From the NCBI GenBank assembly GCA_000320545.1, contig ADNK01002346.1, forward strand, positions 60,489 through 124,488: a stretch of DNA of 64,000 nt. Reading direction: 5' to 3'. Source of the DNA: Bigelowiella natans CCMP2755. Its lineage: Eukaryota > Protista > Cercozoa. Of this stretch, positions 17,905-25,130 are shown one piece after another; position 1 is the first letter of the stretch; the number at the start of each line of letters is the position of its first letter. Made by a program: the position numbers and the translations under genes. The notes under the pieces were generated by a model. It had not been told where the DNA came from, did no database searches, and worked only from the letters and a program-made list of their open reading frames with translations.

Positions 17905-19111
17905 ATGCCTTCTGTGGTATCCATTAACACAAGCAACAAAGGAGCGAATCATTCTGATCTACGACTTCGACGGAGGAGTGGAGATACGAAAATGATGAGA
18001 TCTGGAGAAAAACATAGAAAAGCTCCCGATACAAGTACAGCTCCTTTAAAGATAAGAAGAGAATTCTACTGGTGTGGAAATTCAAGAGCAAACTATTCTC
18101 GCAAGGATAAGAAGAAAATGTTCGATGCTCAGATGGGAAATCTTCACGTAAAACGAAACACTGATTATGGATGCGTCGGCGACTGCATTGTCAGCTATAG
18201 CAACATATGCGATGAATTCGGAAAACTTGCAGCTGGATTTGGGTTTTGGTTTCTGAGACTTTTCCTATTTATAGTCAAAGCTCTATTTGAACCAATTTAT
18301 AGCCGTCTCCCGTGTTTTAACATTGCTGACGGGGCTAGAATTACCTTAACTGAGTCCATTATGGCGTGGTAAAGCGAAGAACCACTTAATAAACACAACA
18401 TTACAGAATAATATAATAATAATGATATAATGAATATAAGGACGATAATGCGCACTTATTAGAGAATATTATGTACTTTCTTTCATTTAATTCCCAGTGA
18501 GAAATATTTTGACAAAGAGCACCTTCCTTCTTGTAATCACTCTCCTTCTTGTCATGTAAGAAGGATGCTGCGGTTTGTCGCCCATTAGGATCCTCATTGC
18601 TGCAATATGTGCCTATGGGTTCATCTACGTGCTCAAAGTTGCGTGTGACTACGAGCCTGATTGCATCACCTTTCGAACGGAAACCGGAGCGTTCATGCTG
18701 GCAAAGGCTTTCGGAAAAGCTGTAACAGCATGCTTCATTGTCGCGATGATATTTGTCCTGAAGCCTGTCACCGAGTACATCGAGACGTAATACAATTAAT
18801 TCAGCTACTTTTGCCCATTTTTGTTTGTTGCATTTGACGACGATTTTATTTTGGTCGATGCCTCGCTTAGACTTCCTTTCGAGAAACGCTGGGGAGCAAG
18901 TTGGAGATCAGTACACCAGAGCTTCATGAATCTTGCAGTGCTTTTTGCGCTTGCTCACTTCTTGGCGCATATGCAGAGAAAGAATAAAGCAAGATTGCCG
19001 GATCTGTATGAAACTTTCCAATTAGTGACAGGAATCATGCTCTTTGGGCTTTGGGTTATAGCTGGATCCCCATTTTGGTTTAGGCGATTGAATGGCACGG
19101 TAGTAGTAGTG

Positions 19112-19145
<34 letters not shown>

Positions 19146-21034
19146 AAGTGAATTACATAATATGATCGAAATGATGAGAAAGAATTATGATAAAGAATAA
19201 TGATGATCGGTCTGGAATCGAAGAAGCAAGTAGGAAATAAAAAGAAGAGGATATTGAAATTTGTGTTCCGAACTACTGCTATATTTCTCACCACTCATTT
19301 AAAAATTGCAGATAGACATGAAGAAGTTGTGCAGACCCTTCGTCGTGATTTTTGATTCGTGTTTCTCCAGAGTTCATCGGTCTTAAATTCGTACATATGT
19401 TGTTAGTAGATACAAATTAGATATACATTTTCATCAAATACACGTACAGCTATAACAACCATGCTGAGAATCCTAAATAATCGGCAACCACAACAGTAAC
19501 AACAACAACAACAACCGCCACCACAACTAGAATCAAGGTTCGGGTAACTTGGAAAGGACACGTGGAGTGGTACGAGCTGAGAGGAGATAGGCCCTGGGAT
19601 GACTTGCTCTACAAAATAAGGAGGGGGTTGAATGATGATGATGGAAAAACGATAACACTAGATAGAGGATGGGTGTACAGCTCGAAACACCACACGTTAC
19701 GTTTGGTGAGAACAAACGACGAGCTGAACGATGCTCTGCACAATGTTAAAGAGCCAGTCATCAGGCTTGATGCTTCTGGTCTCGATATATTAGATCATGA
19801 AGATATTGAGAAAGCTCCAACACCTCCTGAGCTCTCGCCCAAAAAAACAGCGCTCACGAAAAATAGCAGCAGCATCAAGAAATCGTTTAAGAAGAACGCC
19901 TTGAATGAACTGAAGGAGCGCAAGGAGGTCTTAGACGATGAGGACGAAGGTAGCAAAATTAGTCGGGTATCTATCGAAGAAATTACTCACATGGAGAAGA
20001 AAGGTGATGGTAGTAGTAGTGCTACATCGGAAAATGTGAATAATGATGCAGTAGAGAAGGCCCTCGTTACTACTACAATTGAGCTTGTGGAAGCTGTGGG
20101 GGAAAAAAAGGATACTATGACCCAGTTTATCAATAGCAAACTTCCTGATCCTAGTCGCCTACTACCACAACGACGACCAACAAGCAGCACCAACCGGAAA
20201 GTAAGGACAACATAATATACCCATTCCTCTCTCATTTCTGACTCCTCTTTCTCTGTACTTACTACTCGTAACAAACCACTACTTTACAACAAATTTGAAA
20301 TTATTGTGATGGTGGTGGTGGTGATTGGCAGGTGGACGTTCTGGTTTCATTCGATAACGAAGCTAACATATTCCATCTCCGCATTGCAAAGCCTTGGGAT
20401 GATTTGATTGTAGGATTGAAAGAAACATTTGTAGTTGATGAAGAGCGAGGCTGTTTTACGCAGACAGTTAAAGGTACCACCACCACCACTATCATCATCA
20501 TCATCATCATCTTCATTATCATAATTCATGCTACTACTATATACTCCCATGACAGGTCCTTCATTGGACGGTATAGAAGGACTCTATTTTGATGGCAAAC
20601 CAGATGCGAAAGGAGAATACAAATGCACTAAAGTAGACTCGAATGAAACATTGAGTATCATGTTACAAAAAGCAGCTGCTGCTGCTGCTGCTTCTGATGT
20701 TGGTGATGATGGAAAACGAGGAGGGGGTGATAGTAGAGGAAGGCCCAGATTACTAGTATACCCAAAGAAGGTGCGGCGAAGGCATCACCATCATCATCGT
20801 CGGAATAACAACAATGAGACGACTGGTACATGTCCTTTGTTCGGCTGTAACTCCGGGAATCGTAAAGAGAAAGCATACTTCACAAGATGGATGTTCCGAT
20901 GGACCCACATCCCAATGTTTTACATTGTAAGTAGCAGTCATCTTGTTATCGACATTCATAATCAAAGCAAATTTCTTCTTTGGATATTCATGAGACTTTA
21001 CACTCATCCTAATAGCTTACTCCTATCTATTTCA

Positions 21035-21077
<43 letters not shown>

Positions 21078-21354
21078 CCTTTCCTTCCCCCTCTCTCTAT
21101 CCGTCTGTATTAGGTTGCAATCCTGTATACCATCCATGCACAAGACATTTTCCCCATAGTAATCATAATCGTCTGGACTTACTGCTACCGCTCAAGAGTC
21201 TTGCCAGTTGAGAAGATTCTATATACATTTTCACATCGTCAAAATAAATGTGCTCGGTAAGTCGAAGTAAGTAAGTAGGGAGGGACGATGATAAGTCAAC
21301 CTATTAGTACTAGTTTGTTATACGATGTTAAGATTATCATTCCTCCGCGCTCGT

Positions 21355-21392
<38 letters not shown>

Positions 21393-22392
21393 CAAGAGAG
21401 AAAGGGGGGGCGAGAAAGAGCTACAGCAAGAATATTAGTAAGCTCTTCAAATTTGCCCTCCTCCAACGTTTTCCCTTTCTTCTCCTAACTTTTCTTCCTC
21501 CTCTTCTTCTTTCTCTTCCTAAGATTCGCAAATATCCATGACGAGTATCTCTTAAATCTTCGCATTAAACTGGCAAACTCTGTCGTTCCTGATAAGTCAG
21601 TAATAGTATCAGTAGAGTAGCAGTAGCAGCAGTTGGATGTAGCTTCTCTGCACCAATTCATCACCATCATTAATAGTAATAAACGACACTGTCTATTATG
21701 TATCACCATCATTGATAGTAAGCAACGATACTGTCTATTATTCGCCTACTATTTTGTACTAATTTGTGCGTCGTTCGAATGTACGTTTACATCTCTAGCT
21801 TCCATACATTATCATACCATCAATGTACGTTTACATCTCTAGCTCCTACACGTCATCAAACTATCATTATCATTACCATCATCATCAACCACATCCTGAT
21901 CACATTACAACAAACATTTTCCTTCAGATATGGTTATTATGTTGTCCTTGGCCGTGATACGAGAGTATGCAGCTATACAATGGTCCCTGCTGAGGTAGGT
22001 GGTGTGACAATTCAAAGGATGATGAATCATGATGATGATGGTGATATTGAAGAGAGCGAGGAGGAGGTGAAAGGGGAGGAAATAGGAGAGACTTACTTAC
22101 ACCCCAGCTTATGACAAATACTACTATATATGAAAGTTTATGTGAATAATGCTGATAACATGATGATTAAATGCTGCCTGCTTGCTGCGGATACAGGGTG
22201 GAAGCGAGATTCGGCTGACAATAAAGCACTGCACTTTCATCGACTCCGTCCTAGATCAAATTGCTGCTAACGAAAACACCGGTTGGAGGAGCAACAAACA
22301 AACAAACATGCATCTTCCAGCATTCATTCATTAACAAATAATAAGAATACGATTAGTTATGATATTTAGTATTCTGAGGACGATGGTCATTA

Positions 22393-22428
<36 letters not shown>

Positions 22429-24122
22429 AATAGTGGACGTTGAGGAATTGGCAAAGACTGGACAGACATGGTTGTGTGATTAAAACAACACTCACAACAC
22501 TTATTCCCTTCATGGCATCAGTGAGAGGAGGAGGAAGAAGAAGAAAAAGAAGAAGAAGACGACAAGCTCTCTAATGACAAACACATAGGTATAATCTTGG
22601 AAGAGGATTCTTCAAAGTCTATGGACCCTTCATGTCTTGTGATCACACTATTGCAAACGCTGAAAGGGTTGTTATGTTAGTAGGAGGACACTAACCACCT
22701 TCGATCCCCCCACGAAAAGAACAATATGAAAGAGTGGAGAGTGCTATGAGATAATATGAAAGACAAGAGCACAATATAGTATATGATATCCCTCTATCAA
22801 AGCGCATATAATAATATAAATACTGTGAGAAATTCATGGTGATGGTTATGATAATGATGATGATGGTAGTGATGGTGGGCGATATGATATTCTACGTGAT
22901 CAGGTTGCAGTTTTGGTGCAAACGACTGGTAGCGTGGTATCTGACACTGTCATCAGCTTTCAGAACATAAGAAAGTAGTTGAGTTGTTTGTTGTCGTGAT
23001 CTAAGAAGCTTCACATTAACCATAAGCGTGTAGTAGTAGTAGTAGAGAGAGAAAGAGAGAGAAGTAACTGAATCACCTGAATTATAGCAAGACTGCACGA
23101 TTATACACACCTCCATCATTTCGTCGTACTCTTACCATGCCAGACGAATGAGTGCTATTATCATTATGACCATAACAACAATAACAATAACAATAACAAC
23201 AATAACAGCTACTACTATGGCTGTGATAATAATAACAACCTAAAACTAGGTACTGGGACAAGGTTGTTGTCTTTCCAGTTGGCTCGGCACTCATGAATTA
23301 TGATGGTGATAGTAATGTAAAATCATCGTCGGTGAATAACAAAGGGGAGCAGCGGCAAGAGACCACCATTTTTACAAACACTGATGTACAGAACTGGAGC
23401 TCCTCAGAACAAAAGTAGTAAGTGTGCGGGAGAAGAAGTAGCCATATCACGAATGTTGTTTTTAAATAAAATCTGAGATACTACTCGGAACATAATAATA
23501 AAAACCATAATTTCATGATGTGCGTTTATCTGTTCATTTCTCCCGCGTTGAATCTGTTTACTTACCTATAAATAATTGTCACAGATACAAGTGGATTATG
23601 AATCGTATCGATAGAGAAATAGCTGGAGATCAAACGCTACTACCTATGCCTTGCAACCTCAACTCGGCTATGACTCCGAGAAGCCCCCCTCCTCTTGAAG
23701 AAGATCCAACGAAAAAGTTCATGGAGAATAAAATCCCTTATTGGCCAGATTCTGTCAGCTTCAAAGGAAAGGTAAGTGAGGATGATTTCGCTTATGATAA
23801 TGATAACAACAGAAAGTCATCAGTGTTTCAGTGTTTCTTATGAGCGATTGATATTTTGGAAACAACACTGTTCATTTGTCAGCTTCCAGTGGAAGTGCAA
23901 AGAAACAAGGATGATATCGTTGTCATAGGCCTTCACCGTATTCAGAGGAACCTTGCAGAGCACATATTGAAGCAATTACAAATCTATAACTATAACATTT
24001 TGGTATGCAGTGGAGCTTGGGCAAACCATATTCATGACATCCTAGAAGATGACAAGTTTGACCCAGTTGAGGAGAAGCCACTGGAAAAAGTAAAGCTACA
24101 TCTTGAGCTCTTTGGGGATTAG
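17905..24122 (+). CDS. NADPH-oxidase/ferric-reductase-like transmembrane protein with a large loop insertion and a divergent dehydrogenase domain (start 17905 or 17992)
   Basis: TM2 LAKAFGKAVTACFIVAMIFVLKPV; TM3 HQSFMNLAVLFALAHFLAH (H-x13-H); TM4 TGIMLFGLWVIAGSPFWFRR; TM5 FRWTHIPMFYI|VAILYTIHA (H-x13-H); TM6 DIFPIVIIIVWTY. Then CSYT, IRLTIKA, KVYGPF, ILVCSG and a C-terminal LHLELF in the NOX order. Confidence 0.8.
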
Positions 24123-24139
24123 CTTTATCTAGTTATTGT

Positions 24140-25130
24140 TAGCATCTAGTTAGCGTAAAGAGCCGTGGTGAGACGTATTTGCATGATGAGGCTACGTCTA
24201 GATGCAACCAGTAGATGCAAGAAGCAATTTCTTGAGTGCTGCAAGTCTCGCAACACACACCTTGCCATGCATGCGCACCTCTGATCTGTTGTCAACATGT
24301 CGATCACGCACATGAGTAGCAGACCATGCATTTGTGACTTCATGTGCAACTTTGATTCCACCATGCGATCGAGCACAAATTTGAAACATGCGTGCGCTAG
24401 ATTCTGCTCATCTCATGTCATGACAATGACCGCTTAGCGCTTCTCATTTGACAACACAACAAAGCAAGTTTCATTTCCACGTGGATGACACCCAGAGCAT
24501 GCCGCTTTTGCACGTCAGACGTGCTTTAAGTGTGCACCGCACTTCGTGCACACACACACATTGCTAGATTGCACGTGACACACCACACTTGCACTTCACT
24601 TTTTCCTGCCCTGGAGCAAATAATAGTTCACCTACAAGGTCACAAGACTTTTCAAAAGCGTCTCGCTTTGACATGCAGTCGTGACGACGGTGCATTGACG
24701 AGCACAAAATTGAAGTGCACATGCGCTGAGCTCTGTGCATCTCACGTTGTGGCAATGATCACTTGCTAGCTTCGCGCTTCTCGTTTGACAACGCAATGAA
24801 GTGAACTTTGTTTCCACGTGGACGTTCAGAGCACGCCGCATTTTGCACGCACTTCTTGAGACGGAGTATAAAACAATAGTTAAAACCTTCATGATTTTGC
24901 ACGTTGCTCTTATTTGCTCACGCAAGTTCAATGCTGTACTGTGTGCGGCAACACATGCACGTGCGACGTACGTGTTTCAATGAGAAGCGGCGTTCGCATC
25001 GTGCGCGCCCATGTCCAGACGTCTAGGTGTTGACACGCCACTCACACTTCGTGGACTGAACCACCACGTTGACAACGACTGTGGATGGCAAAATCCTGAT
25101 TTTTCCCATGCAATTGGCACATTGAGCAAT
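24140..25130. other. TpA-depleted intergenic tract between convergent genes
   Basis: Long stretches (about 24220-24860) have very few TpA, mostly ctag, ttag or ctac. Overlapping ORF translations are Cys/His-rich and nearly Tyr-free. Confidence 0.75.
24371..24849 (+). repeat. Degenerate direct repeat, two copies of about 145 bp (24371-24514 and 24700-24849)
   Basis: Shared blocks gagcacaaa, tgcgct, catctca, caatga, gcgcttctc, tttgacaac, tttccacgtgga, cagagca and ttttgcacg occur in the same order. Confidence 0.85.

What the first reader, a model, noticed from the sequence alone, without database searches (positions are those of the whole stretch)
19081..20900. NOX/RBOH-like protein with two PB1-like domains inserted in the TM4-TM5 loop
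Seen: between TM4 (...SPFWFRR) and TM5 (FRWTHIPMFYI...) are about 400 aa spread over four exons, where NOX proteins normally have a short cytosolic D-loop. It holds two related modules: IKVRVTWKGHVEWYELRGDRPWDDLLYKIRRGL...LRLVRTNDELNDAL...VIRLDA (about 19532-19775) and VDVLVSFDNEANIFHLRIAKPWDDLIVGLKETF...TKVDSNETLSIML...PRLLVYP (about 20332-20765). Both share PWDDL and the strand-strand-helix...strand-helix-strand pattern of PB1/ubiquitin-like folds, and a charged low-complexity linker separates them. Established: PB1 domains assemble the separate NOX regulators p67phox/p40phox and fungal NoxR/Bem1. Inference: this oxidase-like protein carries its own scaffolding or oligomerisation modules, an architecture I do not recognise.
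Basis: partly seen in the sequence, partly recalled or inferred. Interest (0 to 1): 0.85.

Follow-up and report, generated by a model that had tools for sequence, protein, structure and literature searches.

The report
NOX-like protein with internal PB1 modules
A chlorarachniophyte alga has a very diverged relative of NADPH oxidases/ferric reductases in which a normally short, fixed-length cytosolic loop carries about 400 extra residues with two PB1-like protein-binding modules; I found no description of such a layout, but the main transcripts here keep two introns that would cut the protein short.

Summary
One gene (17905-24122, +, 17 exons) encodes TM helices with the four haem histidines of the ferric-reductase domain. 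Between FRD helices 4 and 5 lie about 400 residues. In 36 canonical relatives the same landmarks are always 29 residues apart; here the distance is about 432, and 373 and 501 in the two orthologues.

Both modules are PB1-like. Their profile matches the genome's own PB1 domains (hhalign Prob 93%, P 2.6e-7; shuffled maximum 15.5 against 40.2) but not its ubiquitins. A model of module 1 hits PB1 structures first (Z 8-8.9). They lack the acidic OPCA cluster and a conserved beta1 lysine.

NOX membership is only partly shown. Pfam finds nothing. The TM part matches canonical NOX weakly (P 6e-4), with all haem histidines aligned. The C-terminal part is not significant and its NADPH glycine loop is lost.

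Only two relatives exist among 1.84 billion representatives: Amorphochlora and Lotharella, both with continuous ORFs.

Caveat: in transcript assemblies from three studies, both introns flanking the micro-exon are retained at exon-level depth, giving a stop after helix 4.

This is a new variant of a known kind. Its function is untested.

The parts
17905..18368 (+). Exon 1: ATG, N-terminal region (REFYW..MGNL conserved) and the first hydrophobic helix
   Evidence: ORF and donor GTAAAG. Joint 18368|18589 in transcript contigs of 3 runs. Aligns with P0002 and P0004.
18589..18786 (+). Exon 2: two TM helices, the second with AKAFG...LKPV (FRD helix 2 motif)
   Evidence: Joints. hhalign pairs AKSFG/LKPV of the family with AKAFG/LlPV of canonical NOX.
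18871..19099 (+). Exon 3: FRD helix 3 with His codons 18914-16, 18956-58 (H-x13-H) and 18968-70 (third, NOX-type His), then FRD helix 4 ending FWFRRLNGT
   Evidence: The histidines align with invariant H369/H383/H387 of 36 canonical NOX.
19100..19311 (+). Intron 3, opening with a (GTA)3 GTG (GTA)11 microsatellite (19100-19144); retained in assembled transcripts, where the exon-3 frame reads poly-Val and stops at TGA 19163-65
   Evidence: The contigs cover 19156-20200 without a gap, and the upstream contig runs 33 letters into the repeat. Sequence.
19312..19379 (+).
   Evidence: Canonical AG/GT borders and fitting phases. Protein match to INFRDLCRPLSRTYECCFMTVR (P0002) and LVFSRLCFPLINCFDKCFESV (P0004).
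19380..19530 (+). Intron 3b, retained in assembled transcripts
   Evidence: same contig and same depth as the exons (165 / 706 / 1038).
19531..19780 (+). Exon 4, first part: PB1-like module 1 (b-b-a-b-b-a-b)
   Evidence: hhalign against PB1, Prob 89.9%, P 1.7e-6. AF2 pLDDT 78. PB1 structures on top, Z 8.0-8.9. PB1 clusters nearest in the Atlas.
19781..20200 (+). Exon 4, second part: charged, low-complexity linker, poorly conserved and variable in length
   Evidence: Translation. Alignment with the orthologues.
20332..20473 (+). Exon 5: first half of PB1-like module 2 (VDVLVSFDNEANIFHLRIAKPWDDL...)
   Evidence: The 140+2 contig letters between 20200 and 20554 equal this exon. phmmer to module 2 of the orthologues, 1e-10 to 1e-20. 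hhalign of m2 against PB1, P 9e-5.
20556..20926 (+). Exon 6: second half of module 2 (to about 20765), basic His/Arg-rich stretch, conserved GCP, and the start of FRD helix 5 with the first His (20906-08)
21114..21256 (+). Exon 7: rest of FRD helix 5 (second His 21135-37, H-x13-H) and helix 6
   Evidence: Joint 20926|21114. Alignment.
21524..21595 (+). Exon 8 (start of the C-terminal cytosolic part)
   Evidence: The contig length fits exons 7+8 (215 letters) and there is a joint 21595|21928. 82% identical to P0002.
21928..21994 (+). Exon 9: YGYYVVLGR...CSYTMVPAE (position of GQY..L and HPFT of NOX)
22197..22281 (+). Exon 10: GGSEIRLTIKHCTFIDS...
22434..22470 (+). Exon 11 (37 nt)
   Evidence: Joint 22470|22589. 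Protein alignment VDVEELAKTGQT. The upstream joint lies at a (GT)n repeat and was not listed.
22589..22667 (+). Exon 12: FFKVYGPFMS (position of IDGPH)
22904..22974 (+). Exon 13: VAVLVQTTGSVVSD (position of the NADPH Gly loop GAGIGLTP, glycines lost)
23250..23414 (+). Exon 14
23585..23771 (+). Exon 15
23883..24122 (+). Exon 16: ...ILVCSGAW...KLHLELFGD, stop TAG 24120-22
   Evidence: Joint also seen in raw RNA reads of X24 (4 reads) and in the contigs. Aligns with the C-terminus of P0002.

Best explanation
The locus is one gene for a very diverged member of the ferric-reductase-domain (NOX/FRE) lineage. So far it is found only in chlorarachniophytes.

Shown:
- Its membrane core keeps the four haem-ligating histidines and the NOX-type third histidine of helix 3. 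It most likely binds two b-type haems (the binding itself is inferred).
- The cytosolic D-loop between FRD helices 4 and 5 has a fixed length in canonical relatives. In solved NOX structures it touches the FAD adenine at the interface of the membrane and dehydrogenase domains (PMC11031084). Here it has been expanded by about 350-470 residues.
- The expansion consists of a Cys-bearing stalk, PB1-like module 1, a disordered charged tether, PB1-like module 2 and a basic stretch.
- The modules are duplicated, diverged PB1 domains.

Inferred:
- The modules form a built-in protein-docking or self-association platform on the cytosolic face.
- This platform controls, or replaces, coupling between the haem core and the degenerate C-terminal domain. 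It would do so through non-canonical contacts, because the OPCA and lysine signatures are missing.

In this organism the bulk mRNA keeps the two introns around the micro-exon. Full-length protein would therefore come only from a minor or conditionally spliced form.
For: Gene structure:
- All other introns are spliced in transcript contigs of three studies.
- The frame is continuous with the micro-exon.
- Every exon aligns with the orthologues.

Conserved architecture:
- P0002 (Amorphochlora amoebiformis genome model, 1056 aa) and P0004 (Lotharella globosa MMETSP transcript, 1369 aa) have continuous ORFs with the same order of parts.
- They were the only credible matches; a third, a bacterial repeat protein, I judged spurious by eye, among 1.84e9 representatives.

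Insert size:
- 29 residues in 36 of 36 canonical proteins, against 373 to 501 in this family.

PB1 nature of the modules:
- hhalign against 6 PB1 domains of the same genome gives Prob 89.9% and 93.4%, P 1.7e-6 and 2.6e-7. The score is 40.2, against 9.1 +/- 1.8 (maximum 15.5) for 150 column shuffles.
- Against 12 ubiquitin-family domains of the same genome, Prob is below 1%.
- The Atlas gives PB1 for 24 of 30 hits, score 0.91, 187 of 256 features. For module 2 it gives only beta-grasp families.
- AF2 of module 1 has pLDDT 78. Foldseek and VIA-align put PB1 domains on top.
- The low-confidence whole-protein model shows b-b-a-b-b-a-b for both modules.

FRD core:
- hhalign of the TM part against 36 canonical NOX gives P 6e-4 and score 35.9, against 17.1 +/- 3.4 (maximum 25.9) for shuffles.
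- H260/H274/H278 fall on invariant H369/H383/H387, AKSFG on AKAFG, and TG on TG.

Role of the D-loop at the FAD site: PMC11031084.
Against: - No Pfam family is hit by the exons or by the full-length orthologues, even at E 10. PF01794 and PF00564 scans of the genome find other loci but not this one.
- The C-terminal part is not significantly similar to canonical dehydrogenase domains (20.8 against 17.7 +/- 3.0 for shuffles). HPFT reads CSYT, and the glycines of the NADPH loop are gone. Oxidase or reductase activity is therefore doubtful.
- The TM5 histidines are 13 residues apart, not 12 as in NOX2.
- The AF2 model of the whole orthologue failed (pLDDT 31).
- The MSA used for the module-1 model contained PB1 domains, so that model leans towards PB1.
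- OPCA is absent, and the beta1 Lys is not conserved.
- The dominant transcripts in three studies retain introns 19100-19311 and 19380-19530, with a stop at 19163.
- No binding or activity was tested.
Confidence: 0.6

Rival explanations
1. In this organism the gene is mostly non-productive. It could be a decaying gene, or one held off by intron retention. The usual product would then be a truncated four/five-helix fragment ending in poly-Val, and the PB1-bearing full-length protein would be made rarely or never.
For: - The contigs cover 19156-20200 without a gap at exon-level depth in 3 studies.
- Unspliced forms of the other introns appear only at 5-10% of that depth.
- No spliced joint at 19099|19312 or 19379|19531 was listed.
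- The stop is TGA 19163-65, and the downstream frame has no ATG before 19991.
- A (GTA)15 microsatellite sits exactly on the donor.
- No protein of 580 aa or more from this organism's locus turned up in the 5.8e9-protein collection.
Against: - The micro-exon, its splice sites and phases are intact.
- All exons are open and strongly conserved with two other genera, which argues for continued selection on a spliced product.
- The read tool dropped 5 joints at repeats in run X5, so a minor spliced form is not excluded.
- Lotharella has a spliced transcript across the homologous region (L004/P0004).
- The donor GTAGTA is used elsewhere in this gene, at 23415.
Confidence: 0.3
2. The protein is not an oxidoreductase of the NOX type at all. 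It would be a haem-binding (or even haem-less) membrane scaffold or pseudo-enzyme. Its C-terminal domain would no longer bind FAD and NADPH, and the PB1-like modules would be its real business end, for example a membrane anchor for a signalling complex.
For: - The NADPH Gly loop is lost (QTTGSVVS for GAGIGLTP).
- HPFT is changed to CSYT, and CGP to CSGAW.
- The dehydrogenase part does not score above shuffles.
- No Pfam hit.
- The genome has four canonical ferric-reductase/NOX genes that could do the catalytic work.
Against: - All four haem histidines plus the third NOX-type His are invariant in three genera.
- The collinear remnants GYYVVL, Y-T, GP and the terminal LHLELF are strictly conserved. 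This suggests a still-folded FNR-like domain under selection.
Confidence: 0.35
3. The modules are only structural filler of generic ubiquitin-like fold, with no PB1-type partner binding. They could, for example, be an intramolecular spacer that packs on the C-terminal domain.
For: - OPCA is absent, and the beta1 Lys varies (K/A/V in module 1; D/R/N in module 2).
- VIA Z for FERM and ubiquitin folds is only about 1 below that for PB1.
Against: - The sequence-profile match is specific to PB1 and absent for ubiquitin.
- Two copies on a long flexible tether look like a docking device.
- Surface residues such as PWDDL and PVIRLD are conserved across genera.
Confidence: 0.25
4. Two separate genes (an N-terminal four-helix protein and a PB1 + C-terminal protein) wrongly read as one.
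For: - The assembled transcripts break at the (GTA)n repeat.
- The upstream contig is at lower depth than the downstream one in two of three runs (394 against 706; 580 against 1038).
Against: - The depths are equal in the third run (150 against 165), and a 3' bias explains the rest.
- The downstream frame has no start codon before module 1.
- The haem sites need histidines from both halves.
- The orthologues are single ORFs.
Confidence: 0.05

Closest known systems
NADPH oxidases / ferric reductases (ferric reductase domain superfamily; Pfam PF01794 + PF08022 + PF08030), e.g. the SH3-NOX of the same genome (L013 = P0005)
   Same: - Helix with H-x13-H plus a third His four residues on.
- A second bis-His helix.
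- AKAFG / L-P-V motif of helix 2 and TG of helix 4.
- A cytosolic C-terminal domain with collinear remnants of the FAD/NADPH motifs, ending in an aromatic (LHLELF for LHKENF).
   Different: - Not detected by any Pfam model.
- One extra N-terminal hydrophobic helix.
- TM5 histidines spaced by 13 residues, not 12.
- D-loop of 373-501 residues instead of 29.
- NADPH Gly loop and HPFT not conserved.
- No SH3 or EF-hand.
PB1 domains (PF00564), as in p67phox/p40phox, Bem1/Cdc24, Par6/aPKC, NBR1/p62
   Same: - b-b-a-b-b-a-b beta-grasp.
- Profile-profile match over about 70 columns.
- Best structural matches are PB1 domains. The p40/p67phox PB1 pair 1oey is also among the matches, at Z 6.8.
   Different: - Below Pfam detection.
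- No OPCA acidic cluster and no conserved beta1 lysine.
- Own signature P-W-D-D-L at the start of helix 1.
- Module 2 carries a variable insert between strands 3 and 4.
- Located inside a membrane protein's loop rather than in a soluble adaptor.
NOX5 / RBOH / DUOX (oxidases with built-in regulatory domains)
   Same: The regulatory or interaction modules are part of the catalytic polypeptide rather than separate subunits.
   Different: Those carry EF-hands (or a peroxidase-like domain) at the N-terminus. Here the modules are PB1-like and inserted within the membrane domain's D-loop. Comparison from established knowledge and PMC3591440.

Membership tests
Ferric reductase domain (FRD) superfamily | Four haem-ligating histidines, two in helix 3 and two in helix 5 (PMC3591440) | tested here: met
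   Window His codons are 18914, 18956 (x13) and 20906, 21135 (x13). They are invariant in P0002 and P0004. Those of helix 3 align with invariant H369/H383 of 36 canonical proteins.
Ferric reductase domain (FRD) superfamily | Match to Pfam PF01794 above its gathering score | tested here: not met
   There is no hit at E up to 1 for the exons or E up to 10 for the orthologues. The six-frame genome scan with PF01794 hits 7 other places, not this locus.
Ferric reductase domain (FRD) superfamily | Profile-profile similarity of the membrane part to canonical members | tested here: inconclusive
   hhalign gives P 6e-4, Prob 29% and score 35.9, against 17.1 +/- 3.4 for shuffles (maximum 25.9, n = 40), over 142 columns with the motifs in register. 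This is above the controls but short of proof.
Ferric reductase domain (FRD) superfamily | FRD-type helical bundle seen in a structure or confident model | tested here: inconclusive
   AF2 of P0002 with a 2-sequence alignment gave pLDDT 30.7 and is unusable.
NADPH oxidase (NOX) subfamily | Third histidine in helix 3 (NOX2 His-119), typical of NOX against FRE (PMC3591440) | tested here: met
   A-H-F-L-A-H, with the His at +4, is invariant in three species and aligned to invariant H387.
NADPH oxidase (NOX) subfamily | Helix 5 histidines 13 positions apart (NOX2 209/222) | tested here: not met
   They are 14 positions apart (P0002 H673/H687; window THIPMFYIVAILYTIH). hhalign needs a one-residue gap.
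NADPH oxidase (NOX) subfamily | FAD motif H-P-F-T and NADPH loop G-x-G-x-x-P; Pfam PF08022/PF08030 | tested here: not met
   The family has C-S-Y-T and Q-T-T-G-S-V-V-S in their place. There are no Pfam hits, and the dehydrogenase part is not above shuffles.
NADPH oxidase (NOX) subfamily | Superoxide production or ferric reduction with NADPH | not testable with these tools
   Needs expression and assay.
PB1 domain (PF00564) | Match to the Pfam model above its gathering score | tested here: not met
   No hit for the exons or the orthologues. The genome scan with PF00564 finds 11 other places, not this locus.
PB1 domain (PF00564) | Profile-profile homology to bona fide PB1 domains, specific against other beta-grasp families | tested here: met
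   Prob is 89.9% for module 1 and 93.4% for the five-module profile, with P 1.7e-6 and 2.6e-7. Shuffles reach at most 15.5 against 40.2. The ubiquitin profile gives Prob below 1%. Module 2 alone matches only over its first half (Prob 59%, P 9e-5).
PB1 domain (PF00564) | b-b-a-b-b-a-b beta-grasp fold closest to solved PB1 domains | tested here: met
   The module 1 model has pLDDT 78.2. The ten best VIA matches are all PB1 (Z 8.0-8.9, rmsd 2.2-3.6 A, 72-78 residues). Caveat: the MSA included 6 PB1 domains. Module 2 was seen only in the low-confidence model.
PB1 domain (PF00564) | Interaction signature: OPCA acidic motif (type A) and/or conserved Lys on strand 1 (type B) | tested here: not met
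   OPCA positions read S-S-K-H-H-T, C-A-K-D-H-T and C-S-K-N-Q-T in module 1, and are interrupted in module 2. The strand-1 position is K/A/V in module 1 and D/R/N in module 2.
PB1 domain (PF00564) | Binding to another PB1 domain or self-association | not tested
This needs bench work.

The most novel reading that the evidence does not exclude
Chlorarachniophytes would have built phox-type adaptor modules into oxidase-family polypeptides themselves. Their canonical NOX carries an N-terminal SH3. This sister family carries two PB1-derived modules inside the D-loop, exactly at the junction of the haem core and the flavin domain. The modules would switch electron transfer by docking partners or by polymerising the protein in the membrane, and productive splicing of the micro-exon would gate when the full-length form is made. 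That would be a self-contained, PB1-gated transmembrane electron carrier of a kind not described.
Probability: 0.2. Interest if true: 0.8.

Novelty: new variant of a known kind. Interest (0 to 1): 0.62.

Why it matters
In known NOX systems, PB1 and SH3 domains sit on separate cytosolic subunits that assemble on the oxidase. The D-loop is a short, length-invariant element at the FAD/haem interface. A conserved lineage with two PB1-derived domains spliced into that very loop shows that the loop tolerates a large domain insertion.

It also offers a natural experiment on how docking at this site controls electron flow. The degenerate NADPH site raises the question of what a haem-competent but possibly flavin-poor NOX relative does.

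The family escapes Pfam, so it is missed by NOX surveys that rely on domain models. The intron retention around a conserved micro-exon may be a case of splicing-gated expression in an alga reported to have unusual levels of alternative splicing (Bigelowiella natans; PMC6142364, which notes conflicting measurements).

Tried and rejected
- Pfam on each exon and on the full orthologues: nothing. The only weak hits were DUF7649 and DUF4405 on exon 3.
- phmmer and a profile search of the PDB sequences: only low-complexity noise.
- AF2 of the whole orthologue with a 2-sequence MSA: pLDDT 31, unusable.
- MAFFT alignments of exon fragments with the full-length proteins scattered the fragments and were not used for folding.
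- hhalign against only three canonical ORFs of the genome was too weak. It was repeated with 36 sequences.
- Word-indexed protein searches with P0002 and P0001 found only themselves.
- Two metagenome scans found no further members.
- There is no paralogue of exon 3 or module 1 in the genome.
- My first model, a single in-frame intron 19100-19537, was dropped once the orthologues revealed the micro-exon.
- An alternative genetic code was considered and rejected: all three stop codons occur in the retained stretch.
- Exons were used by reference, and the database orthologues stood in for the full length.
- The raw-read RNA run X24 is a 3'-end library and said nothing about the critical junctions.
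Full report
**What is in the window.** The sequence is eukaryotic: about 43% G+C, many microsatellites and short GT..AG introns. The window belongs to a 91.4-Mb assembly. Its nearest protein relatives are from the chlorarachniophytes Amorphochlora amoebiformis and Lotharella globosa. A canonical NOX gene elsewhere in the genome is 100% identical to an MMETSP transcript, and 59% and 48% identical to two 'Bigna1' proteins. The organism is therefore a chlorarachniophyte; run and organism names were coded.

**Gene model.** I laid contigs of three runs from three studies, plus one raw RNA run, on 18250-24200.
- The contigs carry GT..AG joints, so they are transcripts.
- They confirm introns 18369-18588, 18787-18870, 20927-21113, 21596-21927, 21995-22196, 22471-22588, 22668-22903, 22975-23249, 23415-23584 and 23772-23882.
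- By the number of contig letters between laid pieces, they also confirm exons 20332-20473, 21114-21256 and 21524-21595.
- All phases fit, from ATG 17905 to TAG 24120-22.

**The missed micro-exon.** The junction between the TM4 exon (ending 19099) and the module-1 exon did not fit: the acceptor at 19530 needs two bases from upstream. The orthologues solved this. Between TM4 and module 1 they have a conserved stretch, I-N-F-R-D-L-C-R-P...C-C-F..V in P0002 and L-V-F-S-R-L-C-F-P...C-F..V in P0004. The window encodes its counterpart (IDMKKLCRPFVVIFDSCFSRVH) at 19312-19379. This exon has AG/GT borders and is 68 nt long, which restores the frame into 19531.

**Rule followed.** Exons were used one by one by reference, and the database orthologues P0002 and P0004 served as the full-length stand-ins.

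**Intron retention.** In all three transcript assemblies the stretch 19156-20200 is one uninterrupted piece. Its depth equals that of the exons (165, 706, 1038). The upstream contig (exons 1-3) runs 33 letters into the (GTA)n repeat that starts at the donor.

For other introns of the same gene the unspliced form appears only as separate pieces at 5-10% of the depth: 11 against 112, and 6.6 against 119. No joint 19099|19312 or 19379|19531 was listed.

- The tool skipped repeats there and dropped five joints in one run, so a minor spliced form cannot be excluded.
- The dominant RNA nevertheless keeps both introns.
- In it the exon-3 frame reads poly-Val and stops at TGA 19163-65.
- The downstream frame has no ATG before 19991.
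- One run also has a minor joint 19568->19793 that removes most of module 1 out of frame.
- The raw-read RNA run is a 3'-end library and did not help.

This remains unexplained. The micro-exon and all other exons are intact and conserved, which argues that a spliced product is under selection. Lotharella has a spliced transcript over the same region (L004).

**The insert.** I aligned 36 canonical NOX/FRE proteins, homologues of the genome's own SH3-NOX.
- The distance from the invariant Gly of helix 4 to the first His of helix 5 is 29 residues in every one of them.
- It is about 432 in the window, 373 in Amorphochlora and 501 in Lotharella.
- The insertion point is the D-loop. In a solved bacterial NOX this loop packs on the adenine of FAD at the interface of the membrane and dehydrogenase domains (PMC11031084).

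**Are the modules PB1?**
- Pfam says no at its thresholds, and a PF00564 scan of the genome does not touch this locus.
- I took six PB1 domains found by that scan (L005-L009, L011) as a family profile and compared it with profiles of the modules from the three species.
  - Module 1: Prob 89.9%, P 1.7e-6 over 71 columns.
  - All five module sequences together: Prob 93.4%, P 2.6e-7, score 40.2.
  - 150 column shuffles of the PB1 alignment gave 9.1 +/- 1.8, maximum 15.5. The reversed alignment gave 8.8.
- A profile of 12 ubiquitin-family domains of the same genome gave Prob below 1%. The signal is therefore specific to PB1, not generic to beta-grasp folds.
- The ESM Atlas puts module 1 next to PB1 clusters (0.91, 24 of 30 hits, 187 of 256 features). 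It puts module 2 of P0002 next to GRHL1_C, PB1, TDP-43_N, Par3-N, CIDE-N and KHA (0.79-0.87), families I take from my own knowledge to be ubiquitin-like or PB1-like folds.
- AF2 of module 1 (window 19532-19792) gave pLDDT 78.2 with strands and helices in the order b-b-a-b-b-a-b. Foldseek's first hits are PB1 domains of Cdc24p, NBR1, aPKC/Par6 and MAP2K5. The ten best VIA-align matches are all PB1 (Z 8.0-8.9). The MSA held two module-1 sequences, half a module 2 and the six PB1 domains, so this model is not independent of the PB1 idea.
- The failed whole-protein model still shows the same secondary-structure order for both modules.
- The two modules are paralogues (p 4.5e-6; P 1.4e-4).
- They are not canonical. 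The OPCA acidic cluster is replaced (S-S-K-H-H-T in the window). The strand-1 lysine is not conserved.

**Is the protein NOX-like?**
- The full-length orthologues hit no Pfam family at E up to 10 and no PDB sequence.
- Against the 36-sequence canonical alignment, the best hhalign match of the family is the helix-3 region. H260, H274 and H278 fall on the invariant H369, H383 and H387.
- With the window's exons added, the TM1-4 segment scores 35.9 (P 6e-4, Prob 29%, 142 columns). Shuffles give 17.1 +/- 3.4, maximum 25.9. AKSFG aligns with AKAFG, LKPV with LlPV, and TG with TG.
- The third histidine is the NOX-type His-119 of PMC3591440. The helix-5 histidines are one residue further apart than in NOX2.
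- The C-terminal 400 residues do not score above shuffles (20.8 against 17.7 +/- 3.0). The greedy alignment is collinear: GYYVVL/GQYlfL, CSYT/HPFT, VYGPY/IDGPH, VCSGAW/FCGP, LHLELF/LHKENF. The NADPH glycine loop (GAGIGLTP) reads QTTGSVVS.
- I therefore take descent from the FRD/NOX lineage as probable. Haem binding is likely. Flavin and NADPH binding are open.

**Distribution.**
- A full HMMER scan of 1.84 billion cluster representatives with the module-1 exon found only the Lotharella cluster (48% identity) and the Amorphochlora protein (33%). A third hit, a bacterial repeat protein, I take to be spurious.
- Word-indexed searches and two metagenome scans added nothing.
- The genome has no paralogue.
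- The Amorphochlora protein is filed as 'hypothetical protein'.
- My literature searches on FRD/NOX evolution did not turn up such an architecture. The FRD survey lists SH3 and other fused modules (PMC3591440), and 'PB1' does not occur in PMC9421330. That is absence in what I read, not proof.

**Mechanism.**
- Shown: a conserved single-ORF architecture with an FRD-like haem core, a D-loop expansion, two PB1-derived modules on a disordered charged tether, and a diverged C-terminal domain.
- Inferred: the modules are a built-in docking or self-association device placed where the membrane and cytosolic domains meet. Through non-canonical contacts it would tune or replace their coupling.
- Rivals: a mostly non-productive gene in this species; a pseudo-enzyme scaffold; modules as mere spacers; two genes (unlikely).

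**Verdict.** This is a new variant of a known kind, of moderate to high interest, limited by the lack of any functional test and by the intron retention.

**Earlier notes of the scan.** The two notes returned by the scan's own index concern other places of the window and did not bear on this finding.

Noticed in passing
L013:3102-5207 (-) = G000:C1058, and protein P0005: The genome's canonical NADPH oxidase carries an N-terminal SH3 domain (residues 4-60), then Ferric_reduct, FAD_binding_8 and NAD_binding_6. Many rhizarian and other protist homologues share this SH3-NOX fusion.
   Followed up: partly
window 19100-19144: A (GTA)3 GTG (GTA)11 microsatellite lies exactly on the 5' splice site of the retained intron. 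In frame it would read as 15 valines. It also breaks the transcript assemblies.
   Followed up: partly
window 19568-19793: Run X5 has a minor GT..AG joint (depth 170 against about 1040) that skips 224 nt inside the module-1 exon. It removes most of module 1 and shifts the frame.
   Followed up: no
window 24370-24485 and 24699-24822: Just downstream of the gene there are two copies of a roughly 120-nt element, 71-80% identical and about 330 nt apart. They lie in a G+C-richer spacer full of GCAC/GTGC-type words.
   Followed up: partly
P0004 (Lotharella globosa), residues about 845-1010: The MMETSP transcript protein has a roughly 170-residue low-complexity insert (HPSIHPS repeats) in the middle of the VAVLV|QTTGSVVS motif. 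In the window an intron (22975-23249 region) lies nearby. It looks like an in-frame retained intron. The 3' end is also aberrant.
   Followed up: no
L003:3001-23860 (Amorphochlora amoebiformis): The orthologous gene is spread over 20.8 kb in more than 30 very short exons (many of 15-40 codons), against 17 exons in 6.2 kb here.
   Followed up: partly
window 19327-19365 and 20840-20850 (protein: LCRP...CF in the micro-exon; GCP before helix 5): Three cysteines flanking the insert on both sides are invariant in the three species (P0002 C328, C338, C648). They could clasp the base of the insertion through a metal or a disulfide.
   Followed up: no
window 24021-24200: The raw RNA run X24 piles up only at the 3' end of the gene (depth 51, against less than 1 elsewhere), with first mates on the + strand and 60-nt reads. 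It is a 3'-tag type library, not useful for splice questions.
   Followed up: no
L016:2380-5409 (-) = G000:C800: A 1010-residue open frame gives a weak PF01794 match (19 bits, below the cut-off) in the genome scan. As a protein it has no Pfam hit at E 0.001. It may be another diverged FRD-like gene.
   Followed up: no
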